Positions 42 through 60,428 of a stretch of DNA of 64,000 nucleotides are shown here, piece by piece (within the stretch, counting starts at the first letter, position 1; every line of letters starts with the position of its first letter). A program made the translations under genes and the position numbers. Under the pieces are notes generated by a model, which worked only from the letters and a program-made list of their open reading frames with translations, searched no databases and had not been told where the DNA came from. The stretch spans positions 1 to 64,000 of the IMG/VR virus record IMGVR_UViG_3300035661_000001, one strand, 5' to 3'.

Positions 42-118
42 GCCCCGGTAGCTCAGCTGGATAGAGCGGCGGACTTCTAAGCCGAAGGTCGGGAGTTCAA
101 ATCTCTCCCGGGGCGCTA
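42..118 (+). tRNA. tRNA-Arg(UCU), copy 1
   Basis: Acceptor GCCCCGG/CCGGGGC, D arm GCTC/GAGC, loop CT-TCT-AA, T arm GGGAG-TTCAAAT-CTCTC; anticodon stem has two mismatches; 3' end G-CTA. Confidence 0.85.
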
Positions 119-14421: not shown

Positions 14422-15534
14422 ATGAGCGCATGGTATTGTCAAGTAGTTTTGATTGAGGCAATTGATAAGCATCCAAATGCCGATTCTTTGTCTATTGCTA
14501 CTGTGCTAGGCGCACATCCAGTCATCATTAAGACTGGTGAATATGAAGTCGGACAGGCTGTTGGGTACATCGGTATTGACACCGTGGTTCCAGCGACTGC
14601 TCAGTTTCATTTCATGAGCCCAGTTGTTCGTGATGCTGATGCCAAGATATTGGGTCATAAGTACGAAGTGGATGAGGTTCCTGAGCGATACCGTATCGTG
14701 AAAGCAAAAAAGATTCGCAGTATTTTTAGCATGGGTCTTCTGGTTCCGGCTCCTGAAGGATTGAGTATCGGCGATTCTATTGTAGATGTTCTCGGTCTGA
14801 CCAAGTGGGAAGAGTCCGAAGAACAGGACGAGATTGCCCATAATAATCCCAAAGTCAGAACCAGAACAGATAAGAAACCTGTTGGTTGGGATATTCCCTT
14901 TTACGATATTAGTTCGGCGAGAAGACACAGTAATCTTTTTCTACCTGATGAGGAGATTGTTCTCCTTGAAAAAGATCATGGATGCAATGCATCATTTTGT
15001 TTTGATGGAGAGAAGCTTTGGAAAAAAAGCCGTAACTTCTTCAAAGCAGATGATGTTACCATCATTGATGGTGAAGGTATGACCCATACGGTATCGAGCA
15101 CTGACCATTGGAGTGAAGCTGCTAGACGATATAATCTGAGAGATAAGCTCGCACCTTTTTCTATGAAGGTTTTCTTTGCAGAATGTGTAGGTCAGGTAAA
15201 AGGTTTCAGGTACGATTCTGAAATTGTGGATGGTCAGCTTCTGACTAAGCTACACTTTTATGATGTATATGATCCGATAGAGCGGCGATATCTTGATTAC
15301 GAAGAGGGTCTTGAAATGATCCTTGCCGCAGGATTGACTCCCAGCAAAGAAATTTATAAGGGACCATGGCTTGGTAATGATAAGATGTTTCCTCTCGGCG
15401 AAGGCAAATCAAGTTGGAATGAAAAGCATGTTCGTGAAGGCTGGGTCATGAAGCCCTTGAAAGAAAGACATGTAGACAAAGTTGGGAGATGGCAATTGAA
15501 GTATGTGTCGGAGGCATATTCTTTGGCTAAGTAA
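14422..15534 (+). CDS. ATP-dependent RNA ligase, DRB0094/Rnl2-like with N-terminal tRNA-binding-like domain
   Basis: IDKHPNADSL N-domain; motif I EKDHGCN, III FFAECVG, IIIa FYDV, IV EGWVMKP, V LKYVSEAY. Confidence 0.9.
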   Translation: MSAWYCQVVLIEAIDKHPNADSLSIATVLGAHPVIIKTGEYEVGQAVGYIGIDTVVPATAQFHFMSPVVRDADAKILGHKYEVDEVPERYRIVKAKKIRSIFSMGLLVPAPEGLSIGDSIVDVLGLTKWEESEEQDEIAHNNPKVRTRTDKKPVGWDIPFYDISSARRHSNLFLPDEEIVLLEKDHGCNASFCFDGEKLWKKSRNFFKADDVTIIDGEGMTHTVSSTDHWSEAARRYNLRDKLAPFSMKVFFAECVGQVKGFRYDSEIVDGQLLTKLHFYDVYDPIERRYLDYEEGLEMILAAGLTPSKEIYKGPWLGNDKMFPLGEGKSSWNEKHVREGWVMKPLKERHVDKVGRWQLKYVSEAYSLAK

Positions 15535-16528: not shown

Positions 16529-17392
16529 ATGAGTACCGGATATAGTTCACACGACAAGGTTAGCCAGATTCGATATACTCAGCCGCTTCTGTCGGATGAT
16601 GGAGTTATCTTCGATCCGGCTGGGTTGTGGACACCTAAGATTGATGCCAGAAGTCCTGCGTATCATTCTTTGTTCGAGCCTTTCGATTTGGATCAATATC
16701 TGTATCCACGTCCTCCCATCGATATGGGTTTGGTCGAGCATGAAGAATATTCATGTGATGTGAATGTCCTACGTATGCCGATCAAATTTCCTGGTACGAA
16801 CTATCGTATTCCAAAAGAAGTAATTGGGCTTCTCCCTGTTATTCAGAGGGCGGCAGAGTACGAAGCGTTCATCAATCCAAGGCATGCCCAGAGCTTTGCT
16901 CACGTTACTTTTGACACAAGTGAAGTTAAAGCTGGTGAGTTTCATCGTTTCCCTGGCTTTCATGGTGATGGTATTCAAGGAACTAAGCTCACGCCCAAAG
17001 TAGTGGCTGAGCATTCCTATATCATGACTACAAATCCTCCGACGGAGTTCTGTCTTCAGCCCTTCTTTTTGAAGCATCTAGATGAGGCGAAGCACAATTT
17101 TTTTCTGGAGTTCGATCGTCAGGCGAAAGATTGCAACGTATATGGTTCGTTGAGCGGGCATCTGTACCTGATCGATCCGTATATGGTTCACAGAACGCCG
17201 TTGATTACTCATCCGGTTCGGCGAACCTTCATAAGAGTAACCTTCTCTTGTATTGAGTTGCAGCACCCCAAAAATACTTTGAACCCGATGTTCCGAGGTC
17301 AAGAGTATGAGAAGCGCATTGATATTCGTGAACGTCTGACTCGCAATGAGTTTGATGTGCCGCTACATCTGTATGGTCTATCGTTAAAATGA
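16529..17392 (+). CDS. putative 2OG-Fe(II) dioxygenase-like protein
   Basis: GFHGDG (HxD), distal VHRT, RTFIRVT. Confidence 0.6.
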   Translation: MSTGYSSHDKVSQIRYTQPLLSDDGVIFDPAGLWTPKIDARSPAYHSLFEPFDLDQYLYPRPPIDMGLVEHEEYSCDVNVLRMPIKFPGTNYRIPKEVIGLLPVIQRAAEYEAFINPRHAQSFAHVTFDTSEVKAGEFHRFPGFHGDGIQGTKLTPKVVAEHSYIMTTNPPTEFCLQPFFLKHLDEAKHNFFLEFDRQAKDCNVYGSLSGHLYLIDPYMVHRTPLITHPVRRTFIRVTFSCIELQHPKNTLNPMFRGQEYEKRIDIRERLTRNEFDVPLHLYGLSLK

Positions 17393-19914: not shown

Positions 19915-19981
19915 AGGTGGGTTATAGGAACCCTTCTTTCTAATTTACTTAAAATAAAATAGGGTTTCTGCTTCCCCATCT
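19915..19981 (+). ncRNA. Conserved hairpin motif, copy A
   Basis: AGGTGGG-TTAT-AGGAACCCT-TCTTTCTA...AGGGTTTCT-GCTTC-CCCATCT. Confidence 0.75.
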
Positions 19982-19996
19982 TTTAGCGAGGATATA

Positions 19997-20563
19997 ATGG
20001 ATAGTCCGTTCTTTAGCAAGGCTACAATCGTTAACACACTACATCGTCAGGTCAAATGGCTTACCGAAGAAGAATTGTCTTCTCTCGCTGAGCAATATTC
20101 TTATGAAGACAAGGTCTTGCATAGTGGTTGGGGTTTCTGCCACCACATTGTTCATCAGGGCTATCTTCGATCTTTTGTCAACTTTTGCAAGCATAAGTTT
20201 GATTCAAAAGTAAAGAAGCGTCAGACTCCTCCCCAATCAAGAATCAGAGAAGTAATTTCTCGTACCATTGATATGGGAAGTGTTAACATTCCTGATGCAG
20301 AAAAATACGATATTTTTGCCCGATCGATCGATTGGACTATCTATTCAGAGTTCGTGAAGCAAAAGATAGCTCAGAAAAAAGATCTTACGAATGACGAGAA
20401 GCTCACGCTTCTTGTTAAACGTTATCATGAATCTGGGCTTGACGGCAAGATCATGAAATCGTGGAAGTGGCGTTCACAATGGTTGAAATCTATTGACGCC
20501 ATCCATTTAAAAATCGAAGATGAAGAAGACGAGCAGTACGGTTACGGCATGTACGGTGGCTGA
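19997..20563 (+). CDS. hypothetical protein (N-domain shared with 20576-21529)
   Basis: LH.Q..WL.E.E...LA....Y.D....SG..FC..RQ.PP motif. Confidence 0.8.
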   Translation: MDSPFFSKATIVNTLHRQVKWLTEEELSSLAEQYSYEDKVLHSGWGFCHHIVHQGYLRSFVNFCKHKFDSKVKKRQTPPQSRIREVISRTIDMGSVNIPDAEKYDIFARSIDWTIYSEFVKQKIAQKKDLTNDEKLTLLVKRYHESGLDGKIMKSWKWRSQWLKSIDAIHLKIEDEEDEQYGYGMYGG

Positions 20564-20575
20564 GGACAAACAAAA

Positions 20576-21529
20576 ATGACCAACAAATTGACTCCACAGC
20601 AAGATCATTTGGCTAATCAACTGCATGAACAAATGCAATGGCTTCATGAACATGAAATGAGAGATCTAGCCAACATCGTTGGTTATGATGATTGTTTCGC
20701 CTATAGTGGCTTGCTGTTTTGTCGATACGTTGTGCAGAACGATTTGACCAGTACGCTTGTAAAGCAGGCTAGCGTATATACTGATCGAGTTAGTCTTCGA
20801 CAGAATCCACCCATCGATAAGGTGAGAGAGATTCTTCTTGAAGCCTTCCAGTTCAAGGGAGAAGCCGTTGAGACATTCGCAATGGATGTTGATATGAAAG
20901 TCTATGCGGCGATGAATGATGGTATGTCATGTTCGCAGCGAAACAGACGCCGGTTCTTTGAAAAATCTGAAGGCAAAAAACTGGATAAGTTGTTTGAGCT
21001 GATGACACCAGCTCAGATAATGAAAGGTTTGTCTTCCGCTCATTGGCATAAAGCTTTCTTGCAAGCCATCGATTTTGTTTGTGGCAAAGAAGAAATGCCT
21101 CTTCTGTTTGGCGTGAAATCAAATGGAGTGTCTGTGGATCGTGATCTGTTGACTCAACAACGTCATGATGCGCAAGTAACTGCCGCTTCGTTTGCTAGAC
21201 AAAGGCAAGCTGCCATTCATGAAATGGAGCTAGAGGAAATGAAGCGTGACGCTGCTGATCAAAAGAGATTGGCTGAAAAATACGCCGCCGAAGCTGCGGA
21301 AAGAAAACTTGAACAGGTTTCCGAAAAGAAGATTGCTCCTGTTCAACAAGCAGTAGAATCTCCCGCGAAAAGATATAGCAATACAGATCCGTATCAATAT
21401 GATCTGTATTACCAGCAACAGCGCGAGCGACGAGAGAATGGATATGCTAGAGAGCCCGTGAATGAGACCGAGCGTGCTGAAGAGCATGCTTTTACTTGGG
21501 GCAATGGGGCTAGACCTTCCTTCTACTGA
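20576..21529 (+). CDS. hypothetical protein with coiled-coil C-terminus (paralog of 19997-20563)
   Basis: Shared N-domain; A/E/Q/R-rich tail. Confidence 0.8.
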   Translation: MTNKLTPQQDHLANQLHEQMQWLHEHEMRDLANIVGYDDCFAYSGLLFCRYVVQNDLTSTLVKQASVYTDRVSLRQNPPIDKVREILLEAFQFKGEAVETFAMDVDMKVYAAMNDGMSCSQRNRRRFFEKSEGKKLDKLFELMTPAQIMKGLSSAHWHKAFLQAIDFVCGKEEMPLLFGVKSNGVSVDRDLLTQQRHDAQVTAASFARQRQAAIHEMELEEMKRDAADQKRLAEKYAAEAAERKLEQVSEKKIAPVQQAVESPAKRYSNTDPYQYDLYYQQQRERRENGYAREPVNETERAEEHAFTWGNGARPSFY

Positions 21530-21542
21530 GATACAAAAATTT

Positions 21543-21606
21543 TGGTGGGCTATTAGAATCCTTCCTTCTACTCTTTTTAAGCAACAGGGTTCTGGCTTTC
21601 CCATCA
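21543..21606 (+). ncRNA. Conserved hairpin motif, copy B
   Basis: TGGTGGG-CTAT-TAGAATCCT-TCCTTCTA...AGGGTTCTG-GCTTT-CCCATCA. Confidence 0.8.
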
Positions 21607-21618
21607 GTTTCAACTAAC

Positions 21619-21675
21619 ACTGGCTATCAAGGATCTTCCTTCTACTTTGGCGTTTCAGATCCTTGGCTTTCCAGT
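21619..21675 (+). ncRNA. Conserved hairpin motif, copy C
   Basis: ACTGG-CTAT-CAAGGATCT-TCCTTCTA...AGATCCTTG-GCTTT-CCAGT. Confidence 0.8.
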
Positions 21676-21697
21676 TTTTCTACAAAGGCAAAAACAA

Positions 21698-23788
21698 ATG
21701 AACAACGCTGTCAACATTCTTCTTCGTCATAACTACATCGAAATTCCTACTGGTAGTGGCGAATGTTCTGCCCAGGATCTTGCTACGGTACTGAGCAATT
21801 TGTCCTACTATGGACGGGCTCTCAGTGTTGATGCTTATCGGGCAGTGTGCCGATTGTCTCACGAAGAATTGACTCGTTGGTGGATGGTGATTGATAAGCA
21901 GCTCAGCGAGATCACTGGTGATAGTCGCAAAATGGATCGTTTTGTTGTCTATAAGAACTTTCCCAATGAAGTTCTCAGCAAGAGCGAAGCTGACTATTGG
22001 ATCCCCCAGATCCTTATGTATTGGGGTTTCCCTAATGATCTTTTCACTCAGCCCGAGGAGAAGCGCCCTGTCTTCGCAGAGAAGGGCAAGGCAATCGTTT
22101 TGTCCCGTGCTCGGAACGAGAGCCTCAATGATATCTTCGTCGCTTACCTGGCGGTCCCTGCGCGCTGGAAGAGCCATGAGAAAGATGATACTCTCTATCT
22201 GGCGGAGCACCTGCCGTTGCCGGCAGATAAGATTGCGTTCAAAGAGAACCTGATTACGCTTGCTACGCATTTCATTGACAGCAATGTGCCACTGCGAATC
22301 TCTTCGGCTACGGACGTTCTGCGTCTTGCGGTTGGACTGAGCAATGGTGATGTTTCTTTGGTGACGAAAAGCAAGTTCGTTTCTTTCCGTCGTCCCGCCC
22401 GTCGATACTTGTGTACTCTTCTGGAGAATAGTTCCAACCTGAGCGACGATATTGCTCGCCGTCCTGAAATGTTCAAGCGTCTTTTGCACCAGCTTCATCC
22501 TGGTGATTTCATTAAGGCATGCCCTAAGACTTGTGAGGTCATGGATAAGCTTTACTTTAACAAGGTAGAGTCTTATAACTCCAAGATCGAAAAGATGATT
22601 GCCGACAAGAATCCCGAGGTTCTCAAGGTGCTGGCTGGTCGTGCTGGTGAATTCCGCCGCCGTCTGGTTCATATGATTGAAATCTTTGGTGATAAGGCGG
22701 TCAAGGCTTTCAGTGATAAGAAGGTTCTTGCCAAGCTGACCAACGGTCAAGTGGTGGCACTTCGTACCTTCTTGGAGACTGTTAACACGAGATTTCATCG
22801 TGTGTTCCCGCCTGGTGGTAACTGGAACAAGCTTCAGATTGGTGAGGCTAAGTGGGTCGAAGAGACCCATCTCTTGGCACTGATCGAGGTTCTCGGAGAC
22901 GTTCTCAAGGACCGTCTTCCCAAGATCAAGTATCTTGATCCGAAGTCGGCGATGATCAAGTTGCCGAGTAATGGAGACGCAGGCGAGTACACGCGTGGAA
23001 CTTCGTTCCCGATCCCAGAAGGAATGACATTCATCCGTTCGGCAAGCTATTGGAAGATCAGTAGTAAGGGCTACGTCTGGTTTGACAATGGTTGGAACTT
23101 CTTTACTGACGAGTGGAAGAACATGGGTTCTGTCGGTTGGAGAGATCCGTTCTTCGGCGGTGTTGCCAAGAAGGATCGACGCGGGTATCTTACCCGTAGC
23201 AATGAGGATGCTGCGGCAGTCTTCTCTGGTGATCCTACCAATACCAAGGAGATGAAGGGTCGCGCTTGTCAGATGATCGATCTGTATCTGGAGCGATTGA
23301 AGACTGAGGGAGTGCGCTATGCTGTGTGGAACATCCTGGCATACAGCAAGATTCCCTTCTCTGATGCTGAAGATGTGTTCGCTGCCCTTCAGTGGGGCGA
23401 GCATGCAGCAGAAGGAAAGCTGTTCGAGCCGGCGCGATGTCAGGTTGCGTTCCCGCTGACCAGTAAGCAGATGACCAAGTACATCGTGATGATCGATCTT
23501 GAGAAGCGTGAGATGATTTATCTGGATGCTAACTTGGCGGGCGATGTCAGTTCTGCTGGAGCTAATGGCGATCGGTTGGAGAAGACCATGCCTGCGATGG
23601 TTGAGTATCTTCGGTCTCTCCCATCCGTTCATGATCTGTTCATTGAATCAGTTGCTCCGGAAGGTGAGCTGAGCATCATGTATTCCGACAAGGATGTCAA
23701 GCTGGAGGGTGGGAAGGCATTTGTTTTTCGCCCAGAGAATAAAGAAAATCATTATACCAGAGTGGGAATCAATTCTCTACTTACATAA
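21698..23788 (+). CDS. MXAN_6230/SCO0854-like protein with C-terminal TerD-related domain
   Basis: VYKNFPNEV...PQILMYWG, RPEMFKRLLHQLHPG, RAGEFRRRL, then FSGDPTN...ACQMIDLYL...REMIYLD; family recalled, not searched. Confidence 0.65.
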   Translation: MNNAVNILLRHNYIEIPTGSGECSAQDLATVLSNLSYYGRALSVDAYRAVCRLSHEELTRWWMVIDKQLSEITGDSRKMDRFVVYKNFPNEVLSKSEADYWIPQILMYWGFPNDLFTQPEEKRPVFAEKGKAIVLSRARNESLNDIFVAYLAVPARWKSHEKDDTLYLAEHLPLPADKIAFKENLITLATHFIDSNVPLRISSATDVLRLAVGLSNGDVSLVTKSKFVSFRRPARRYLCTLLENSSNLSDDIARRPEMFKRLLHQLHPGDFIKACPKTCEVMDKLYFNKVESYNSKIEKMIADKNPEVLKVLAGRAGEFRRRLVHMIEIFGDKAVKAFSDKKVLAKLTNGQVVALRTFLETVNTRFHRVFPPGGNWNKLQIGEAKWVEETHLLALIEVLGDVLKDRLPKIKYLDPKSAMIKLPSNGDAGEYTRGTSFPIPEGMTFIRSASYWKISSKGYVWFDNGWNFFTDEWKNMGSVGWRDPFFGGVAKKDRRGYLTRSNEDAAAVFSGDPTNTKEMKGRACQMIDLYLERLKTEGVRYAVWNILAYSKIPFSDAEDVFAALQWGEHAAEGKLFEPARCQVAFPLTSKQMTKYIVMIDLEKREMIYLDANLAGDVSSAGANGDRLEKTMPAMVEYLRSLPSVHDLFIESVAPEGELSIMYSDKDVKLEGGKAFVFRPENKENHYTRVGINSLLT

Positions 23789-24328
23789 TGAATGTTTGTA
23801 AACTCTTTCTAGCCAATCAAAAAATTGTTGTTTAGACATATTATGTTTGGCTACGTTGCATGTAAAACAACACGTAACGCAATTCGCCAACGTATGTGAT
23901 AATGAGTTATCAACTCTATCTAAACCATTATAAGTGAACTGATATTGATCATATCGTGGTCTATTTTTGGGACATTTATTAACTGTGTGAGCCGGAGCAC
24001 TACCACAATAGTGGCAATTCATCTGGCTCATTTCAAGAAATTTTTCAAAAGTAATATCTGCTTCACCATAATTATGGTGATAGTAGATGGCATTTGCTGA
24101 AACTATTCTTGGAACTACAAATCTTTTGGTCAAATCAAAATGTTGACCACAATTTTTAATTTCCCCATTACGTAGTAGGGCTCCAAATACAGTATGATAA
24201 TTACCGCAAGAACAAAGGCATTTCCAATATATCTTTTTTCTTTTTGTGTTGCTAAATACTGTATCTGACTTTTCTATTACTGTAAGTAATCCAAATGTTT
24301 TTCCGGTTAAATCTATGAGTTTTGACAT
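23777..24328 (-). mobile_element. HNH homing endonuclease inserted in the 3' end of the TerD-like gene
   Basis: DLTGKTFGLLTVI..WKCLCSCG N-domain; CHYCG...GLDRVDNS...NCVTCCFTCNVAK; AT-rich. Confidence 0.85.
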
Positions 24329-24379
24329 ATCTGTTGTTCTCGTATTGTAATCGTTTACAAAGATAACAGATTATTTATA

Positions 24380-24433
24380 GAAAACAAAGACAACGTCTAC
24401 GATCGAGTTCCGCTCAACAAGTTGTTGGGCTGA
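24380..24433 (+). pseudogene. Displaced ancestral 3' end of the TerD-like gene
   Basis: Encodes ENKDNVYDRVPLNKLLG*, versus the current C-terminus ENKENHYTRVGINSLLT*. Confidence 0.75.
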
Positions 24434-24444
24434 GGTATTCCAAC

Positions 24445-24900
24445 ATGAATATGTATCTCGCGGCTTTGCATCTTACCAAACGTGAAGTATTTGAAAATGC
24501 TATGCGGCGGTTTCAATTCAGACGAGAAGAGAGTCTTCTTGTAATTCATGATGGTAAGATGTGGTTGTTTGAACGTAAAGACAACTCAGTTTCTATCAGA
24601 CCCATCCATGGTTTCGTGGTGGGACTGGTACAGGAGGATTGGAATCCTGATGGCAAAGCCGGCAAATATACCAGACATACCAGATATGTTGCTCAAATAT
24701 CTTGGAAGTCCGGCGGCGAACCAACCGGCAAGTGGTTCTCCCATGAAGTTGATTCAACTATTTCTACAGCCTATGTATTTTGGGAGATGAAGAATCTCAA
24801 TACATTCCTTGATAATTTTGAAGATGATTTCTTCAAATTGAAACAAGGTAAGGAGATATTCCTAGTTCCTGTCACAGTAGAGCTGGGTAAAATATCGTAA
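24445..24900 (+). CDS. hypothetical protein
   Basis: GAGG SD. Confidence 0.7.
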   Translation: MNMYLAALHLTKREVFENAMRRFQFRREESLLVIHDGKMWLFERKDNSVSIRPIHGFVVGLVQEDWNPDGKAGKYTRHTRYVAQISWKSGGEPTGKWFSHEVDSTISTAYVFWEMKNLNTFLDNFEDDFFKLKQGKEIFLVPVTVELGKIS

Positions 24901-24906
24901 AGTTTC

Positions 24907-24992
24907 GGCGGGCTATGAGGGTTCTTCCTTCTAAATTAAAAAGCCTCGGGCTAATAACCCGAATAAAAATCTAGAGCCCTCGCTTCCCCGCT
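24907..24992 (+). ncRNA. Conserved hairpin motif, copy D (extra TCGGG/CCCGA hairpin in the loop)
   Basis: GGCGGG-CTAT-GAGGGTTCT-TCCTTCTA...AGAGCCCTC-GCTTC-CCCGCT. Confidence 0.8.
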
Positions 24993-25012
24993 ATTTTTGT
25001 TTGGAGTATACG

Positions 25013-25243
25013 ATGAGAGAAAGTGGATACTATTGGGTAACATGTTCTATTCTTGGATGTATCCATAATGATCATGATAAACCGCAAGTTGCTTACTACA
25101 ATAGTGAAGACACGGATCAGCCATGGATGTTAATCTATGACGAAAACACTTACAATGAGAGAGACTTCCGTGTGATCGAGAAGGTCTCTTCGCCTCCAAT
25201 TGAAGGTCGCCAGCGTGTAACGCTTGCTTCGCCAATTGGTTGA
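25013..25243 (+). CDS. small conserved phage-type protein
   Basis: GGAG SD; MRESGYYWV...W...W pattern. Confidence 0.7.
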   Translation: MRESGYYWVTCSILGCIHNDHDKPQVAYYNSEDTDQPWMLIYDENTYNERDFRVIEKVSSPPIEGRQRVTLASPIG

Positions 25244-25256
25244 AGGATAAAATTTC

Positions 25257-25319
25257 GGTGGGCTATAAAGATCCTTCCTTCTATTTTGGTTTAAATTTCA
25301 GGGTCTTTGCTTTCCCATC
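25257..25319 (+). ncRNA. Conserved hairpin motif, copy E
   Basis: GGTGGG-CTAT-AAAGATCCT-TCCTTCTA...AGGGTCTTT-GCTTT-CCCATC. Confidence 0.8.
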
Positions 25320-25355
25320 AACACTTAAGCGCTCTTCAAGAAGGAAACGCGATAC

Positions 25356-25688
25356 ATGAGCGGAAACTATCAACGCTGGAGTGCAACGATACGTAACTGG
25401 TTTGAGTTCGTGCTCTCTTTCTGGGAAGACGGAACGGATCTCGATCCGCATGATCATGGCGGATCGTCGGGATATGTTTTTCTTTGGTGGGGTGAACTTC
25501 ATGAAAGATCGTTCGTAGAAGAGAATGGAAAGCTAGTTCAGAAGGATCAACTGGTAATGCGGGGTCCTGCTTTCAATCGAATCACCGCTTCTGATATCCA
25601 TGACGTTAAGGCATGTGGGTTTGCAATGGCGACCCATCTGTACTATCCTCCAATCAAGAACGGTAAGAAATTCAAAAGACCGGAGTAG
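25356..25688 (+). CDS. cysteine dioxygenase-like cupin
   Basis: PHDHGGS..V..GELHE...IHDV...THLYYPP matches the CDO HxH...H...HxYxPP pattern. Confidence 0.75.
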   Translation: MSGNYQRWSATIRNWFEFVLSFWEDGTDLDPHDHGGSSGYVFLWWGELHERSFVEENGKLVQKDQLVMRGPAFNRITASDIHDVKACGFAMATHLYYPPIKNGKKFKRPE

Positions 25689-28541: not shown

Positions 28542-30092
28542 ATGGATATGGCTAGTAAGAAAACTGCTCCGGCGGCTAAGAAAGCAAAGCCGGAGCGTGA
28601 TGAGTTTGGTCGTTTCAAAACGAAGCTGGCAGCAATTGTCGGCGTAGCTTCCAAGGTGGTCACGAAGAAAGAGCCTGTCAGTAATAAAATTCTGACGAAG
28701 GATCTTTCAAAACTTTTCAGTCGTGCCAGGGCGAAGAGTGGTAATCCCATTTTCCTTCGTGCGGTCAATCAGCGTACTTCCGATATCAAGGATCGGTACG
28801 GTTATACTTTCTCTTACGGTCGTCTTCTCCCCGAAGCTGATAGGGAAATGATTCTCATTGCTGAGAATGATTACGGAAGTGGATTGTTTTACCTTACGTA
28901 TGAAACCATGATCGGTGCGCAGCGTCGCTCCAGCTATTTCGATGCCAGTTTCGAGTGGGAGCAGATTGATCCTGATCACAAGGATTACCCTGCCCGCATG
29001 GCAGAATACGATGCGAATCGTATTAAGACGTTGAGCACACGTCTTCATTACGACGGCAAGATTGGGTGTGATCCCGAGGTTTTTGTGGAGAGCGCAGCTG
29101 GGAGTATGATCCCTGCATTCCTTTTTCTCCCCAGCAAAGAGAAGCCTGCGCGGACTCCCAATTGGTCGAAGCATTTTAACGGTCATGGTGGAACCACCAT
29201 GTATTGGGATGGATTTCAGGGAGAATACACTACCAAGGCAAATTATTGTCTTGGTTATCATGGCGACTCCATTGCCGCTGGTTTGCGCGGTATCTATGAC
29301 GCAGCTCGAAAAAGGTTCAAGGATAGCAAGCTGAGTCTGCGTTCCGTCTTCCATCTTTCTCCGGAGATTTTGGAAGGTGCTCTCGATGAGCACGTTGCGT
29401 TTGGTTGCATGCCGAGCCTCAACGCATATGGTCTGAAGGTGAATATGCCTCCCGCTCGTGAGGTTCCTTTCCGGTCTGCTGGTGGTCATATCCACTTCGG
29501 TATCGGTAAGAAAAACCATCCCAAGGCTGGGAAAATCGTCAAGGCTCTTGACGCTGTTCTTGGTGTGGCTTGCGTGAGTTTGTTCGCAGAGTTCGATGAT
29601 CCTAATCGTCGCAAGCTGTATGGTTTGCCTGGCGAGTACCGTCTCCCTCCTCACGGCATTGAATACCGTACGTTGTCCAACGCGTGGCTGAGCCACCCGT
29701 TGATCATGAACATGGTGTTCGATCTTGCAAGGAAGGCAGTTATCTTTGGCAAGGATGATTACTTCGAGAAGCATTGGGTTGCTACAGAAGAGGAAGTTAT
29801 CAATTGCATTATCAATTGCGACGTGAAGGCGGCGCATAAGATGATGGAGAGAAACAAGGAAGCATTCCTTCAGTTGCTGAAGGCTTCTTATAGCTCTGCA
29901 CAGCCTGCTGAATTGGAGATGCTATATCAGGTCTTCATCAAGGGCATTCGTTCGGCTATCAAAGACCCTCTCGATCTGACTACCAATTGGCGGTTGGAAA
30001 GCGGTTGGAAGCCTCATTCGGGCGTCGTCGGCGAGCCCAATGCGAGAACCTTCTTGTACAATCGTCGCAACGATAGTGAGTGCAAGATGTGA
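28542..30092 (+). CDS. phiEco32-like COOH-NH2 ligase type 2, copy 1
   Basis: IGCDPEVF, WDGFQGE, FGCMP, FRSAGGHIHFG, RRKLYG.PGEYR, GIEYRTLSN. Confidence 0.9.
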   Translation: MDMASKKTAPAAKKAKPERDEFGRFKTKLAAIVGVASKVVTKKEPVSNKILTKDLSKLFSRARAKSGNPIFLRAVNQRTSDIKDRYGYTFSYGRLLPEADREMILIAENDYGSGLFYLTYETMIGAQRRSSYFDASFEWEQIDPDHKDYPARMAEYDANRIKTLSTRLHYDGKIGCDPEVFVESAAGSMIPAFLFLPSKEKPARTPNWSKHFNGHGGTTMYWDGFQGEYTTKANYCLGYHGDSIAAGLRGIYDAARKRFKDSKLSLRSVFHLSPEILEGALDEHVAFGCMPSLNAYGLKVNMPPAREVPFRSAGGHIHFGIGKKNHPKAGKIVKALDAVLGVACVSLFAEFDDPNRRKLYGLPGEYRLPPHGIEYRTLSNAWLSHPLIMNMVFDLARKAVIFGKDDYFEKHWVATEEEVINCIINCDVKAAHKMMERNKEAFLQLLKASYSSAQPAELEMLYQVFIKGIRSAIKDPLDLTTNWRLESGWKPHSGVVGEPNARTFLYNRRNDSECKM

Positions 30093-30143: not shown

Positions 30144-30299
30144 GTAGGTTGAACGGTGCGAACCCATCTCCGAATATTGAGTGGGAAGTACACCAAACGA
30201 GATGATTAGCAACCTAACGTGGTGAAGGGTTGCAAGTTCCCATCCAGCATAATCTGGATGATTGTTTGCTACAAAGACTTCAACAAAGAGAAAGAACAC

Positions 30300-31718
30300 A
30301 TGACGATCACATATCAGCAGATTTATGAGCAGCGTCTTCACGTCAAGATGACGATTTTCCATCTGAAGGATTCCTTGCTGCCGGAATCCTATGCCATTGA
30401 TGCCAATGGCAAAGCTATGCGCGATGCCGATCATGCTATCCATCGAGCAAAGTCGCTGCCGACTGATGTTATTGCAATTTCGGAAATCTATGCGAACAAG
30501 CAGTATTGGATGGCTCGTCTCATCAACGCCAAGACCGGCTTGCTGATTAATAATTGCCATATCAATCCTGATGATTCTCTCGAAGTGATTTCGGAAGGTC
30601 CGATCGTTGATACTTTCAAAAAGCTCATGGATGATAATTGTCATCATTTCATGATGCATAATTTCACGATCGGTTCCGATCCTGAGATTTTTGTGGAGGA
30701 CGAGGAGGGCGGATGTATTCCCTCTTGGCTGTTCCTTCAAGGCAAGAACGGTACTGATAAGACTTCCAATCTTATGATGTACGGTGGGAAGGGTGCCCAA
30801 AAGATGTATTGGGATGGTTACCAGGCAGAGTTTTGCGTCTTCGCAAATAACTGCAATGAGTACCACACCGACTCGGTGGCTGCTGGTTTGCGCGGCGTTC
30901 ATGATGCTGCCCGAAAGAAGTTTCCCAAATCGAAGCTTTCGGCTACCAGCGTTTTCGATATCTCTTCGGAGATGATGTCGGCCGCTGCTGATGAGCATGT
31001 GGAATTTGGTTGCATGCCGAGCTACAATGCTTATGGTATTGCCCCCAATCTTCCCCCTGGTCGTGAGGTCCCTTTCCGATCCGCTGGTGGTCATATCCAC
31101 TTCGGAACGGGCAAGATGAGCCACGAAGAGGCGAATCCGATTATCAAGACTTTGGATAAGATCTTGGGTGTCGCCTGTGTCAGTTTGTTCGGTGCATTCG
31201 ATTCGCGCAAGCGTCGGCACTTCTACGGTCTTCCTGGTGAATACCGTCTTCCTCCTCATGGCGTGGAATATCGACCGTTGTCGAACGCATGGCTGATCCA
31301 TCCGTTCATCATGAACATCGTGATTGATCTTGCACGTAAGGTGGTCGTTCTTGCTCAGCGTGACTGGGCAGATAAGTGGATCTCTGATGAGGCAGAGGTT
31401 ATTGATACCATCATTCGATGTGATGTGGTAGCGGCTCGTGCCTCGCTGGAGAAGAACAAGAAGTTGTTCAAGCAGCTTCTGAAGGCTTGTTATAGCGAAG
31501 GTACCTACACCTGGGCTGATGAAGATGATATCGAGGCTATCTTCGGTGTCTTCATGAATGGTCTGGAGTCCGCGGTGGAAGATCCGCGCGACTTCGTCAA
31601 GAACTGGAAGCTCGATGCTTCTGATACCAGCGTTGATCGTTGGTTGCCTGGCAACAAGACTTTCAATTGTCGAGCTTCGACTGCGGTTAAGACGCTGCGT
31701 TCTGGCAAGAAGGTCTGA
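30300..31718 (+). CDS. phiEco32-like COOH-NH2 ligase type 2, copy 2
   Basis: IGSDPEIF, WDGYQAE, FGCMP, FRSAGGHIHFG, GVEYRPLSN; different N-terminal domain. Confidence 0.9.
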   Translation: MTITYQQIYEQRLHVKMTIFHLKDSLLPESYAIDANGKAMRDADHAIHRAKSLPTDVIAISEIYANKQYWMARLINAKTGLLINNCHINPDDSLEVISEGPIVDTFKKLMDDNCHHFMMHNFTIGSDPEIFVEDEEGGCIPSWLFLQGKNGTDKTSNLMMYGGKGAQKMYWDGYQAEFCVFANNCNEYHTDSVAAGLRGVHDAARKKFPKSKLSATSVFDISSEMMSAAADEHVEFGCMPSYNAYGIAPNLPPGREVPFRSAGGHIHFGTGKMSHEEANPIIKTLDKILGVACVSLFGAFDSRKRRHFYGLPGEYRLPPHGVEYRPLSNAWLIHPFIMNIVIDLARKVVVLAQRDWADKWISDEAEVIDTIIRCDVVAARASLEKNKKLFKQLLKACYSEGTYTWADEDDIEAIFGVFMNGLESAVEDPRDFVKNWKLDASDTSVDRWLPGNKTFNCRASTAVKTLRSGKKV

Positions 31719-31842: not shown

Positions 31843-32817
31843 ATGACGTTCAAACGTTTGCCGCAATATATGCCACAGATGCAACAAGGACTGCGCATTG
31901 CGGAGCCGCCACCGACCATCCCTGACGTAAAAGCCAGCGATGCCAATCCATCGATCTTTGATGATCCTTGGAATGATGAAGATACTCAACCGGGTCTGGG
32001 ACCTGTAGTACATAAGCCGGAGAACAAAATGTCACAAAAGCCTAGGGAAATCGAACGAAGCAATCTGATGTTCGTGTTCGGAAGATATCGTGAAGGGTTC
32101 AATCTTCACCGTGTCGTCGCACGAGATAAAGGTTTCAAAGGAATTACTCGTACTCTTCCTGAGTTCAAGCTGATCAATATCAACGGAGAGTTTCCTGTTG
32201 TTATTCCTGATGGCAAGGGACGGGTTGTTGGAGAGGTTTATGAATGCGAAAATAGAACTTTCGACTTCATGGATTCTCTGGAAGAGTGTCCTGGAACACA
32301 AAACAGAGTGATCATTTCGTTGGAGAATGGCGCTCGGGCTCATATGTATCTGCTTCCCAAGCATAAAGCTCCTAATCGTGAGGAAGAGATTCCTTCAGGT
32401 GATTGGGTTGAATGGAAGCGTAACGAGCGTTCCAGAGAGAAGGAAAAGAAAGAAAAGTTCATCGCGGCGATGGCGAAGGGTAAAGCTGAAGCTAATCGTA
32501 AGCGAGCCATTGAAGAAGAGCAGGCTGCTCTAGCGGCTGCTCATAGAGTTGCCAATCCTACGAATCATCTGGCTAACTTGTGGGATCCTATTCGTGGCAA
32601 GTGGGAAAAAGTTCCGCCCTCGAATGATACCAAGACCTCTCGTGAGATCACGGTCTATTCTAGTAAGAACGGCAAGAATCATGTTCATGTCTCTGATGTT
32701 GATATGGTTGTACTTCGTGCCAAACTGATATCAGATAATCAGTCTGTCCCGGAAACGGATTCACAAATTCGTAACAAGATCATGTCGATCTATGGTGTCT
32801 GGTTCGAGATTGGTTGA
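31843..32817 (+). CDS. gamma-glutamylcyclotransferase (AIG2-like) domain protein with N- and C-terminal extensions
   Basis: MFVFGRYREG...FPVVI...VVGEVYE...MDSLEE...AHMYL. Confidence 0.75.
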   Translation: MTFKRLPQYMPQMQQGLRIAEPPPTIPDVKASDANPSIFDDPWNDEDTQPGLGPVVHKPENKMSQKPREIERSNLMFVFGRYREGFNLHRVVARDKGFKGITRTLPEFKLININGEFPVVIPDGKGRVVGEVYECENRTFDFMDSLEECPGTQNRVIISLENGARAHMYLLPKHKAPNREEEIPSGDWVEWKRNERSREKEKKEKFIAAMAKGKAEANRKRAIEEEQAALAAAHRVANPTNHLANLWDPIRGKWEKVPPSNDTKTSREITVYSSKNGKNHVHVSDVDMVVLRAKLISDNQSVPETDSQIRNKIMSIYGVWFEIG

Positions 32818-43210: not shown

Positions 43211-43305
43211 GCCACTATAGCTCTCAAGGGACTAAGAGCATTGCATCCTGGTGTTACTTTTGTTTCGGATGTAAGATGCGGGTTCGAGCCCCGTTAGTGG
43301 CGCCG
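43211..43305 (+). tRNA. tRNA-like gene with 24-nt anticodon loop (17-nt insertion)
   Basis: GCCACTA/TAGTGGC; GCTC/GAGC; TTGCA(TCC)/(GGA)TGTAA; GCGGG-TTCGAGC-CCCGT. Confidence 0.65.
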
Positions 43306-60356: not shown

Positions 60357-60428
60357 ATCTAGGTAGCTCAATGGCAGAGCTTCGCATCTAAGCGAAAGAC
60401 ATGAGTTCGATCCTCATCCTAGAACCTA
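60357..60428 (+). tRNA. tRNA-like gene with 6-nt anticodon loop AUCUAA (CUA, or UCU with a deletion)
   Basis: TCTAGG/CCTAGA; GCTC-AATGGCA-GAGC; TTCGC-ATCTAA-GCGAA; ATGAG-TTCGATC-CTCAT; C-CTA. Confidence 0.7.

What the first reader, a model, noticed from the sequence alone, without database searches (positions are those of the whole stretch)
19915..25319. Five intergenic copies of a covarying RNA hairpin around the TerD-like gene (candidate new cis-element or Y-RNA-like family)
Seen: A 19915-19981, B 21543-21606, C 21619-21675, D 24907-24992 and E 25257-25319 share one architecture: outer stem (GGUGGG/CCCAUC type), asymmetric loop YUAU opposite GCUUY, an exactly 9-bp inner stem, UCYUUCUA, then a variable loop. 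The inner stems differ in sequence (AGGAACCCU/AGGGUUUCU, UAGAAUCCU/AGGGUUCUG, CAAGGAUCU/AGAUCCUUG, GAGGGUUCU/AGAGCCCUC, AAAGAUCCU/AGGGUCUUU) yet all pair, some through G-U pairs, which indicates selection on RNA rather than DNA structure. Copies sit in intergenic gaps 15-36 nt upstream of starts (B and C in tandem before the TerD-like gene). Established: bacterial Y RNAs have a bulged protein-binding helix plus a pyrimidine-rich loop and occur in RNA-repair neighbourhoods. Inference: a protein-bound RNA regulon or excised sRNA set tied to the TerD-like protein and RNA ligases. No Ro60 gene is in the window, so the binder may be the TerD-like protein or the 19997/20576 paralogs.
Basis: partly seen in the sequence, partly recalled or inferred. 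Interest (0 to 1): 0.9.

Follow-up and report, generated by a model that had tools for sequence, protein, structure and literature searches.

The report
New hairpin RNA partnered with TerD-fold protein
The five hairpins are real members of a large, apparently undescribed family of structured RNAs that, in jumbo phages and many bacteria, almost always lies beside one uncharacterised 700-residue protein gene; some relatives carry a tRNA-like module like bacterial Y RNAs, so this looks like a second, Ro60-independent Y-RNA-type RNA-protein particle.

Summary
Observation confirmed. Five + strand copies (19915-19981, 21543-21606, 21617-21677, 24906-24993, 25256-25320) share one fold. It has a 5-7 bp outer stem ending in two G-C pairs and an internal loop (CUA opposite NUUU).

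The family has over 250 copies in about 100 viral contigs. A model built only from loci found through the protein recovers exactly these five copies in the window. Covariation is strong: 94-95% of cells pair, against 40-58% in slid controls, and 12-14 of 16 pairs show compensatory changes. Rfam 15 and the literature searches hold no match.

The RNA tracks the 696-aa gene at 21698-23788, an alpha-solenoid plus a TerD-fold domain with no Pfam family. The gene is present in 78 of 98 RNA-first loci, and the RNA in 38 of 45 protein-first bacterial loci. No other neighbour is conserved.

Three bacterial loci carry the RNA on the opposite strand. Five have a sigma-70-like promoter ending 4-7 nt before the hairpin. 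Phage arrays abut tRNA genes. Fourteen relatives carry a permuted tRNA-like module that matches Rfam YrlA below threshold.

Best reading: a processed or independently transcribed small RNA bound by the adjacent protein, analogous to Y RNA and Ro60 but not a member of that family. Binding itself is untested.

The parts
19915..19981 (+). Hairpin RNA copy A. Outer stem 19916-19921 pairs with 19975-19980. Internal loop UUA opposite CUUC. Inner stem 19925-19934 pairs with 19961-19970. Loop starts UCUUUCUA at 19935-19942.
   Evidence: R1 74.9 bits; R2 48.1 bits; MFE fold z -3.0
21543..21606 (+). Hairpin RNA copy B, first of a tandem pair upstream of the TerD-fold gene. It starts 13 nt after the stop of ORF 20576-21529.
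   Evidence: R1 77.2 bits; R2 55.1 bits; fold z -2.7
21617..21677 (+). Hairpin RNA copy C, 10 nt after B. It ends 20 nt before the ATG at 21698. The outer stem has only 5 bp.
   Evidence: R1 69.7 bits; R2 54.5 bits; fold z -3.2
21698..23788 (+). Partner gene of 696 aa. N-terminal alpha-solenoid (about residues 1-410), TerD-fold beta-sandwich (about 430-620) and a small C-terminal alpha/beta part. It is uncharacterised (phrog_33734; no Pfam family).
   Evidence: AF2 pLDDT 87, pTM 0.85. Foldseek matches TerD structures 3ibz and 2qz7 at E 1e-4, TM 0.64-0.69. PHROG match. No Pfam match. Homologue present in 78 of 98 RNA-first loci. 2,397 50%-identity clusters at E<=1e-3.
24906..24993 (+). Hairpin RNA copy D, downstream of the gene. 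An HNH gene on the minus strand and ORF 24445-24900 lie in between. Its apex carries an extra small hairpin.
   Evidence: R1 71.9 bits; R2 57.0 bits; fold z -2.5
25256..25320 (+). Hairpin RNA copy E, between ORF 25013-25243 and ORF 25356-25688.
   Evidence: R1 86.7 bits; R2 57.7 bits; fold z -3.0

Best explanation
The hairpins are genes for small structured RNAs of about 60-140 nt. They are either transcribed from their own promoter or cut out of a polycistronic or tRNA-containing transcript. I propose that each RNA is bound by the protein encoded next to it (alpha-solenoid plus TerD-fold domain) to form an RNA-protein particle.

The inferred protein-recognition site has three parts: the two invariant G-C pairs with the CUA / NUUU internal loop; the conserved U.G wobble pairs; and the invariant single-stranded UCCUUCUA. 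The 10-bp inner stem holds these elements exactly one helical turn apart, on one face of the helix.

The apex is a free, exchangeable module: a plain A/U-rich loop, an extra hairpin, or a permuted tRNA-like domain. By analogy with Y RNA and Ro60, I infer that this module presents the particle to, or tethers it to, tRNA-handling or RNA-repair factors.

Shown: the structure, its strand, the family, the gene linkage, and independent transcription signals in some bacteria. Inferred: physical binding, processing and the downstream role.
For: 1. Structure under selection as RNA.
- 94.6% of cells pair in 122 distinct phage sequences, against 40-50% when the partner is slid; 14 of 16 pairs show double changes.
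- 95.2% pair and 12 of 16 show double changes in 45 sequences from loci found through the protein.
- MAFFT plus RNAalifold gives the same fold without the model.
- U.G pairs are conserved at inner-stem positions 1 and 7. These would be A.C mismatches on the other strand.

2. Linkage to the gene.
- RNA-first scan: 98 loci hold the structure, 78 also hold the gene, and 210 of 212 hairpins are on the gene's strand, mostly within 250 nt upstream or 400 nt downstream.
- Protein-first scan: 38 of 45 bacterial loci from 6 phyla have a hairpin within about 230 nt of the gene.
- The hairpins persist when the protein is only 24-26% identical: LR745208, the gut contig MT835874 and, in degenerate form, Mycobacterium phage WXIN. 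They are also present in Xanthomonas phages XacN1 and Xoo-sp13.
- No other gene is conserved next to it.

3. A separate RNA rather than an mRNA leader.
- In bacteria 24 loci have it downstream, 11 upstream and 3 on the opposite strand (L123, L130, L142).
- Sigma-70-like promoters end 4-7 nt before the hairpin in 5 of 41 cases, against 0.42 expected. One is a perfect TTGACA-17-TATAAT in L155.
- In 15 phage loci the array starts 1-22 nt from a tRNA gene on the same strand, 7 times tRNA-Lys. Spacers within arrays are mostly about 5-17 nt.

4. Modular, Y-RNA-like design.
- 14 of 199 unique hairpins carry a T-arm / closed acceptor hairpin / D-arm module.
- The four such modules included in the Rfam scan match YrlA at 34-40 bits, E 2e-5 to 1.5e-3, and ARAGORN calls no tRNA there.
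- Chen et al. 2014 (PMC4201824) describe the same pairing of a tRNA-like Y RNA with a plain hairpin Y RNA that has a pyrimidine-rich loop.

5. RNA-metabolism genes recur nearby in phages. These are an RNA ligase in the window, Thg1-like genes in 11 loci, and a tRNA nucleotidyltransferase plus tRNAs in RpAliso.
Against: No experiment or expression data shows that the RNA accumulates or that the protein binds it.

The protein has no recognised RNA-binding domain. Its N-terminal domain gives only weak ARM/HEAT-type matches (E>0.03), and TerD domains are not known to bind RNA.

In the window itself no promoter or terminator signal stands out. Four of the five copies sit 15-35 nt before a start codon, which would also suit a cis role.

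Most bacterial cases lack a detectable sigma-70-like promoter. The scan is crude, and many of these genomes use other promoter types.

Conserved adjacency alone cannot separate 'bound by' from 'regulates' or 'is a substrate of'.
Confidence: 0.55

Rival explanations
1. The hairpins act in cis on the mRNA. They are operators or stability elements in the untranslated regions flanking the TerD-fold gene and its neighbours. The encoded protein, or a host factor, binds them to control translation or decay of the transcript (autoregulation).
For: In the window four copies end 15-35 nt before a start codon. In phages 210 of 212 copies are on the gene's strand, and about half of the arrays are followed by an ORF start within 50 nt. 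No promoter or terminator stands out in the window. Binding of a protein to its own mRNA would also give tight linkage.
Against: In the unbiased bacterial set the hairpin is downstream of the gene in 24 of 38 loci and on the opposite strand in 3. Promoters are placed to start transcription at the hairpin. Arrays of up to 4 copies, continuity with tRNA arrays and tRNA-like apical modules are hard to explain for an operator. The hairpin does not include the Shine-Dalgarno sequence.
Confidence: 0.2
2. The RNAs are decoys or substrates for tRNA-directed enzymes, for example host anticodon nucleases or tRNA repair and modification enzymes. The neighbouring protein is a co-factor of that pathway rather than a direct stoichiometric binder.
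For: Some members carry tRNA-like modules. The arrays lie next to tRNA genes. Thg1-like, CCA-adding and RNA ligase genes lie nearby in some phages. Copy number is expanded in jumbo phages.
Against: Only 14 of 199 unique copies have the tRNA-like module, and none in the window does. The invariant parts are the stem frame and UCCUUCUA, not tRNA features. The repair genes are not conserved neighbours, whereas the TerD-fold gene is. Bacterial loci usually hold a single plain hairpin.
Confidence: 0.12
3. It is an RNA antitoxin or inhibitor, working like a type III toxin-antitoxin pair. The structured RNA neutralises a harmful activity of the adjacent protein.
For: The module has two components, an RNA plus a protein, with no other conserved partner. 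It is scattered across phyla and phages as if moved horizontally. In phages there are tandem RNA units directly upstream of the gene.
Against: The units are not near-identical direct repeats. Bacteria usually have a single copy, often downstream. The protein has no similarity to ToxN/AbiQ-type endoribonucleases and gives no PADLOC match. There is no terminator between the RNA and the gene.
Confidence: 0.08
4. It is a general phage mRNA processing or transcription signal, such as a T7-type RNase III site, a terminator, a promoter stem-loop cassette, or a DNA-level hairpin or recombination site.
For: The two stems with an asymmetric internal loop in intergenic gaps resemble T7 RNase III sites (from general knowledge). 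Variable small ORFs lie between copies in the window.
Against: The copies are confined to the neighbourhood of one gene: five within 5.4 kb of a 64-kb window and none elsewhere. The element is present as a single copy in bacteria. There is no consistent U-tract after the stem. Conserved U.G pairs and strand specificity argue against a double-stranded DNA signal.
Confidence: 0.05

Closest known systems
Bacterial Y RNAs with Ro60/Rsr: YrlA (Rfam RF02553) and the YrlB/Yrn2-type hairpin Y RNAs (Chen et al. 2014, PMC4201824)
   Same: - Small RNAs are encoded in one to several copies beside a single large helical-repeat protein gene.
- The 5' and 3' ends form a stem with a conserved internal loop, and the distal module is variable.
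- One subtype carries a permuted tRNA-like domain (T-arm, closed acceptor stem, D-arm, YUAY before the variable loop). Another is a plain long hairpin with a pyrimidine-rich loop.
- The loci occur in bacteria and large phages, sometimes near RNA-repair genes.
- The 'GG-CUA-stem ... stem-4 nt-CC' frame resembles the middle of the YrlA consensus.
   Different: - The neighbouring protein is not Ro60. It has no TROVE or vWA domain by Pfam or Foldseek, and has a TerD-fold domain instead.
- The Ro60-binding motif GNCGAAN0-1G is absent (0 of 199).
- UCCUUCUA and the fixed 10-bp stem have no counterpart in Y RNAs.
- The window copies give no YrlA match at all, and relatives reach only 30-40 bits against a threshold of 69.
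T7-type RNase III processing signals in phage polycistronic mRNAs
   Same: They are intergenic, lie on the sense strand, and consist of two helical segments separated by an asymmetric internal loop, just upstream of ribosome-binding sites.
   Different: RNase III sites are spread along the genome and are not tied to one gene. This element lies only beside the TerD-fold gene, also occurs as a single copy in bacteria, has its own promoters in some, and carries an invariant loop sequence and tRNA-like inserts.
Type III toxin-antitoxin systems (ToxI/ToxN, CptIN, TenpIN)
   Same: Tandem structured RNA units lie directly beside the protein gene they partner. The module has two components and is mobile between hosts and phages.
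   Different: Type III antitoxins are near-identical direct repeats of 34-37 nt upstream of a small endoribonuclease, with a terminator in between. Here the units differ in sequence, are often single or downstream, and the protein is a 700-aa solenoid/TerD-fold protein.
Tandem-hairpin riboswitches and protein-sponge RNAs (guanidine-II mini-ykkC; CsrB/RsmZ)
   Same: They are repeated hairpins with invariant loop nucleotides and variable stems.
   Different: Riboswitches sit in 5' leaders of the regulated gene. This RNA is mostly downstream in bacteria and sometimes antisense-oriented. Sponge RNAs are not tied to the gene of their protein partner.
MXAN_6230/SCO0854 RING-domain protein family (NCBIfam NF041916). 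This concerns the protein only.
   Same: Residues of about 290-640 of the window protein and of three bacterial homologues align with profile positions 385-735 (145-217 bits).
   Different: The scores are far below the family cut-off of 600 bits. No RING domain was detected by Pfam in the proteins studied here. Whether the RING family also has a partner RNA was not examined.

Membership tests
Y RNA / YrlA (Rfam RF00019, RF02553) | Encoded next to a Ro60/Rsr (TROVE + vWA) gene and bound by it | tested here: not met
   The conserved neighbour has no Pfam TROVE or vWA match, even at E<=10 or across 58 homologues. Foldseek of the full-length model and of the N-domain model lists no Ro60 among the top 50 PDB matches. 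The window has no other ORF >=450 aa apart from the two COOH-NH2 ligase genes and opposite-strand shadow ORFs over the partner and ligase genes.
Y RNA / YrlA (Rfam RF00019, RF02553) | Ro60-binding motif on the 5' strand (GNCGAAN0-1G in bacteria; GGUCCGA in animals) | tested here: not met
   0 of 199 unique hairpins have it in the 5' 44 nt. The motif definition is from PMC4201824.
Y RNA / YrlA (Rfam RF00019, RF02553) | Scores at or above the Rfam gathering threshold (69 bits for YrlA) | tested here: not met
   The window copies give no match at E<=10. tRNA-like relatives reach 30-40 bits, and only over the tRNA-like part. The YrlA matches in the window itself are artefacts of adjacent tRNAs.
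Y RNA / YrlA (Rfam RF00019, RF02553) | Permuted tRNA-like module (T-arm, closed acceptor stem, D-arm) | tested here: inconclusive
   Present in 14 of 199 unique relatives from 12 loci, and ARAGORN calls no tRNA there. Absent from all five window copies.
Y RNA / YrlA (Rfam RF00019, RF02553) | Physical association with the partner protein, and dependence on it for stability | not testable with these tools
   Needs immunoprecipitation or a gel-shift.
TerD domain proteins (Pfam PF02342) | TerD beta-sandwich fold | tested here: met
   Foldseek matches 3ibz and 2qz7 at E 1e-4, probability 1.00, TM (target) 0.64-0.69, over about 170-200 residues of the C-terminal half.
TerD domain proteins (Pfam PF02342) | Sequence match to the Pfam TerD model | tested here: not met
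   No Pfam match for the window protein or for 57 homologues.
Cis-regulatory 5' leader or riboswitch | Always upstream of the regulated gene and on its strand | tested here: not met
   Protein-first bacterial loci: 24 downstream, 11 upstream, 3 on the opposite strand.
Type III toxin-antitoxin | Near-identical tandem direct repeats upstream of a ToxN/AbiQ-type endoribonuclease | tested here: not met
   The copies differ in stem sequence. The protein fold is a solenoid plus TerD. No PADLOC match.
T7-type RNase III sites / dispersed intergenic stem-loops (PeSL-like) | Distributed among many intergenic regions of the genome | tested here: not met
   Only five copies, all within 5.4 kb around one gene in a 64-kb window, with the full model and no filters. 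Linkage to the gene holds in 78 of 98 and 38 of 45 loci.

The most novel reading that the evidence does not exclude
This is a previously unrecognised class of RNA-protein particle, present in at least six bacterial phyla and expanded in jumbo phages. A solenoid/TerD-fold protein, unrelated to Ro60, uses a Y-RNA-like adaptor RNA whose exchangeable apex (including a tRNA mimic) directs it to tRNA or RNA-repair machinery. It would be a convergent or anciently diverged counterpart of Ro60 and Y RNA, and the first RNA-linked role for a TerD-fold domain.
Probability: 0.4. Interest if true: 0.9.

Novelty: new variant of a known kind. Interest (0 to 1): 0.85.

Why it matters
If the RNA and the protein form a particle, Y-RNA-type adaptor RNAs are not a peculiarity of Ro60. 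They would be a more general design that bacteria and large phages have used at least twice.

It would give a first functional handle on a protein family of about 2,400 sequence clusters that has no annotation. It would also connect the long-enigmatic TerD fold to RNA.

The system is experimentally reachable. The motif and the gene are present in cultured Xanthomonas jumbo phages (XacN1, Xoo-sp13) and in cultured bacteria (Neolewinella persica, Mesorhizobium, Pararhizobium, Dactylosporangium, Virgisporangium).

The RNA itself is strongly covarying, has a fixed-length stem and an invariant octamer, and is a good target for structural work and for Rfam.

Tried and rejected
- Rfam. Gathering and permissive scans of the window, of the finding region and of 18 bacterial loci gave nothing over the hairpins. 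The only overlap was a chance DUF805b match on the wrong strand at 17 bits.
- Anti-Shine-Dalgarno idea (loop UCCUUC pairing with the downstream ribosome-binding site). I compared the loop by eye with the sequence upstream of the starts in the window. Complementarity is 4-5 nt at best and inconsistent. Many copies have no gene downstream. Dropped.
- Terminator idea. There is no consistent U-run after the outer stem and no excess of terminator-like sites at the copies.
- Extra conserved structure in the apex. Beyond UCCUUCUA(A) the loop is A/U-rich and not conserved, and nested hairpins are idiosyncratic.
- Ro60 kinship of the protein. The PDB sequence search gave no match for the single sequence and only two weak chance matches (E 0.14 and 0.68) for the profile. 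Pfam gave nothing. The N-domain model matched only generic ARM/HEAT solenoids.
- Conserved neighbours. All-against-all clustering of ORFs in 122 phage-derived and 45 bacterial loci found none besides the partner gene. Thg1-like genes occur in 11 phage loci only.
- The window's 287-aa ORF 16529-17392 is not the XacN1 'nucleotidyltransferase'.
- Literature. Searches for the motif sequence, TerD with RNA motifs, jumbo-phage structured RNAs and SCO0854/MXAN_6230 found no prior description.
- Eighteen of the 116 pattern-matched viral loci had no structural hit and are probably chance matches of the 16-base pattern.


Full report
**The observation**

The window equals the first 64 kb of a 452-kb IMG/VR contig, IMGVR_UViG_3300035661_000001. 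Loci L002 and L093 are identical to it. It has seven tRNA genes and many small ORFs, as in a jumbo phage.

The five elements lie on the + strand at 19915-19981 (A), 21543-21606 (B), 21617-21677 (C), 24906-24993 (D) and 25256-25320 (E). Each folds alone into the same shape, with z-scores of -2.5 to -3.2 against dinucleotide shuffles. From base to apex the shape is:
- an outer stem of 5-7 bp ending in two G-C pairs;
- an internal loop of 3 nt (CUA; UUA in A) opposite 4 nt (CUUY);
- a loop that starts UCYUUCUA.

The core pattern occurs five times without mismatch in the window and nowhere else. A covariance model of the five (R1) finds only them.

**A large family**

A 16-base pattern scan of viral contigs returned 116 loci. 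R1 found 220 + 33 significant matches in them. An independent regular-expression and pairing scanner found 256 in 98 loci. The other 18 loci are probably chance pattern matches.

On the 150 best matches (122 distinct):
- 94.6% of cells form standard pairs, against 40-50% when the 3' partner is slid by 1-3 columns;
- 14 of 16 pairs show changes on both sides;
- no shuffle reaches the observed covariation score.

The consensus is NNNN-GG-CUA-U-N7-CU-UCCUUCUA-(variable apex, about 11-139 nt)-AG-N7-(G/A)-(C/A)UUU-CC-NNNN. G+C ranges from 18 to 58% in the phage copies. The inner stem length is constant, because the scanner that demands exactly 10 pairs finds as many copies as the model does.

**The partner gene**

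tblastn of the window's ORFs against these loci showed that only one is shared: the 696-aa product of 21698-23788, found in 79 loci. Of the 98 loci with a structural hit, 78 hold this gene. Most of the rest are short fetched stretches, or carry the hairpins near a locus edge.

Of 212 hairpins in loci with the gene, 210 are on its strand. 136 lie upstream, mostly within 250 nt, in tandem arrays. 74 lie downstream on the same strand, mostly within 400 nt, and some start a few bases before the stop codon. Arrays hold 1-4 copies, with spacers mostly about 5-17 nt.

The ATG at 21698 is the likely start. Homologues align from residues 1-5, and the alternative TTG at 21647 lies inside hairpin C.

**An ascertainment-free test**

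A scan of one genome per bacterial and archaeal species, using the protein alignment alone, gave 45 loci. They come from Cyanobacteria, Myxococcota, Actinomycetota (Dactylosporangium, Virgisporangium), Bacteroidota, Rhizobiales, Chloroflexota and others, several on megabase chromosomes of isolates.

R1 finds a hairpin within about 230 nt of the gene in 38 of the 45. These 45 hairpins, a few of them from phage records, again show 95.2% pairing and 12 of 16 compensatory pairs. MAFFT plus RNAalifold, without any model, returns the same structure.

Model R2 was built only from this set. With filters off it finds exactly the five window copies (48-58 bits) and nothing else.

The motif is also upstream of the homologue in the cultured Xanthomonas phages XacN1 and Xoo-sp13. 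It persists where the protein is only 24-26% identical: the gut contig MT835874, the uncultured phage LR745208 and, in degenerate form, Mycobacterium phage WXIN.

**RNA, not DNA; a separate RNA, not a leader**

Two positions of the inner stem are predominantly U.G, and a third is often G.U. On the complementary strand these would be A.C mismatches.

In the bacterial set the hairpin is downstream of the gene in 24 loci, upstream in 11 and on the opposite strand in 3 (L123, L130, L142). This rules out an obligatory 5' leader.

In L123 and L130 the only sigma-70-like site in the region sits on the hairpin's strand, with its -10 box ending 6-7 nt before the hairpin. Over all 41 bacterial hairpins, 5 have such a site ending 4-7 nt upstream, where 0.42 would be expected. 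One is a perfect TTGACA-17-TATAAT squeezed between the stop codon and the hairpin in L155.

In 15 phage loci the array begins 1-22 nt from a tRNA gene on the same strand, seven times tRNA-Lys. In L066 it begins three bases after the tRNA's CCA end. This fits co-transcription with tRNAs and release by tRNA-end processing, which is an inference.

In the window itself no promoter or terminator signal exceeds chance. There the copies are probably parts of a long + strand transcript.

**tRNA-like members**

The longest apical inserts (about 94-107 nt) contain a T-arm (GGUUCGAGUCC type), then a closed hairpin, then a D-arm (AGCUCAGUCGGUAGAGC type). This is a circularly permuted cloverleaf.

Rfam's YrlA model ('Y RNA-like') matches four of these modules at 34-40 bits (E 2e-5 to 1.5e-3; threshold 69). 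It aligns over the tRNA-like part and a preceding GGGGAA-CUAU element. ARAGORN calls no tRNA there.

Fourteen of 199 unique hairpins, from 12 loci, have this module. Ruegeria phage RpAliso has one upstream of its homologue. None of the five window copies has it; copy D has a small extra hairpin.

Chen et al. 2014 describe this combination for Ro60. [quoted passage not shown]

**The protein**

AlphaFold2 with 58 homologues gives a confident model (pLDDT 87, pTM 0.85). It is all-alpha to about residue 410, then a beta-sandwich at about 430-620, then a small alpha/beta end.

Foldseek matches the sandwich to the TerD crystal structures 3ibz and 2qz7 (E 1e-4, TM 0.64-0.69). No Pfam model matches this protein or any of 57 relatives.

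A separate model of the N-terminal domain (pLDDT 85) matches only generic ARM/HEAT solenoids weakly, such as MO25, importin-alpha and FANCI (E>0.03). Ro60 does not appear.

Full-length structural relatives exist in Lactobacillus phage LpeD and Campylobacter phage IBB35, and Campylobacter phage CP21 gives a partial match. NCBIfam shows sub-threshold homology of residues of about 290-640 to the MXAN_6230/SCO0854 RING-domain family. PADLOC shows nothing.

A search of 1.84 billion representative proteins gives 2,397 clusters at E<=1e-3 and 1,120 at E<=1e-30. Every source name seen is 'hypothetical protein'.

**Neighbourhood**

Clustering of all ORFs in the loci shows no other conserved neighbour, in phages or in bacteria. 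RNA-metabolism genes recur loosely in phages:
- an RNA ligase at 14422-15534 in the window;
- Thg1-like genes in 11 loci;
- a tRNA nucleotidyltransferase and tRNAs around the RpAliso gene.

The small ORFs between the window's hairpins (19997, 20576, 24445, 25013, 25356) have no homologue in other loci. They look like insertions into an array that in relatives is usually uninterrupted.

**Interpretation**

Established here: a real, strand-specific, strongly covarying RNA structure; a family of hundreds of copies; near-obligate linkage to one protein gene across phages and six bacterial phyla; and signals of independent transcription in some bacteria.

Inferred: the adjacent protein binds the RNA. 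Two invariant elements, the GG/CUA/NUUU/CC loop region and UCCUUCUA, are held exactly one helical turn apart by a stem whose sequence is free but whose length is fixed. This is what a protein that reads both elements at once would select for.

The exchangeable apex, sometimes a tRNA mimic, makes the design parallel to Y RNAs, which tether Ro60 to other factors. I put this reading at about 0.55. The rivals are:
- a cis-acting element on the mRNA (0.2), weakened by downstream and antisense placement and by the promoters;
- a decoy or substrate for tRNA enzymes (0.12);
- an antitoxin-like inhibitor (0.08);
- a general processing or DNA signal (0.05).

**Comparison and novelty**

It works like Y RNA and Ro60 but fails the membership tests: no TROVE protein, no Ro60-binding motif (0 of 199) and no Rfam threshold match.

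Rfam 15 has no family for it. Full-text searches for the motif, for the protein family and for related terms found no description. Absence from these sources is not proof that it is unpublished.

I rate it a new variant of a known kind, a Y-RNA-type adaptor RNA with a different protein. There is a fair chance that it is a distinct class of particle.

Noticed in passing
window 23777-24328 (- strand): An HNH/endonuclease VII-like ORF lies convergent with the partner gene and overlaps its last 12 nt. Among the fetched loci it is found essentially only in this contig. It is probably a homing-endonuclease insertion between the gene and its downstream hairpins.
   Followed up: partly
window 19997-20563 and 20576-21529: These two ORFs are paralogs (28% identity over 107 aa, E 1e-14). 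They have no Pfam or PHROG match and no homologue in any related locus. Like 24445, 25013 and 25356, they seem to be inserted between hairpins of an array that is usually uninterrupted.
   Followed up: partly
window 42-116 and 169-243: Two tandem tRNA-Arg(TCT) genes with the same length and the same Rfam score. They produce a spurious sub-threshold YrlA match across the pair.
   Followed up: partly
window 60357-60426; 43211-43302: ARAGORN reports the tRNA at 60357 with an undetermined two-base anticodon. Only Rfam sees the 92-nt tRNA-like match at 43211 (32 bits). These may be unusual or interrupted tRNAs.
   Followed up: no
window 14422-15534: An RNA ligase (PF09414 with a PHA02142 OB domain) lies about 4 kb upstream of hairpin A. 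It is not a conserved neighbour of the module.
   Followed up: partly
window 28542-30092, 30219-31718, 31843-32817: Two paralogous phiEco32-like COOH-NH2 ligase genes are followed by a gamma-glutamyl cyclotransferase-like gene.
   Followed up: no
L100 4740-4810: A skipping-rope RNA (RF02924, above threshold) lies directly before a tRNA-Gln and a three-hairpin array upstream of the partner gene. A 2026 preprint reports this RNA to be a tRNA mimic.
   Followed up: no
L001 4738-5049: A phage-encoded tmRNA is followed by tRNA-Gln, tRNA-Trp and tRNA-Lys, then the hairpin array and the partner gene. The same tRNA order recurs in L066.
   Followed up: no
L092 3622-4479 and 10 other loci: Thg1-like (tRNA-His guanylyltransferase family) genes lie next to the module in a subset of phage contigs.
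   Followed up: partly
L137 5157-5223 (- strand): A Transposase-2 RNA (RF03015) lies just after the hairpin in Dactylosporangium cerinum. This hints at a mobile context.
   Followed up: no
partner protein residues about 290-640: There is sub-threshold homology to the NCBIfam MXAN_6230/SCO0854 RING-domain family. Whether that family also has a partner RNA is unknown.
   Followed up: no
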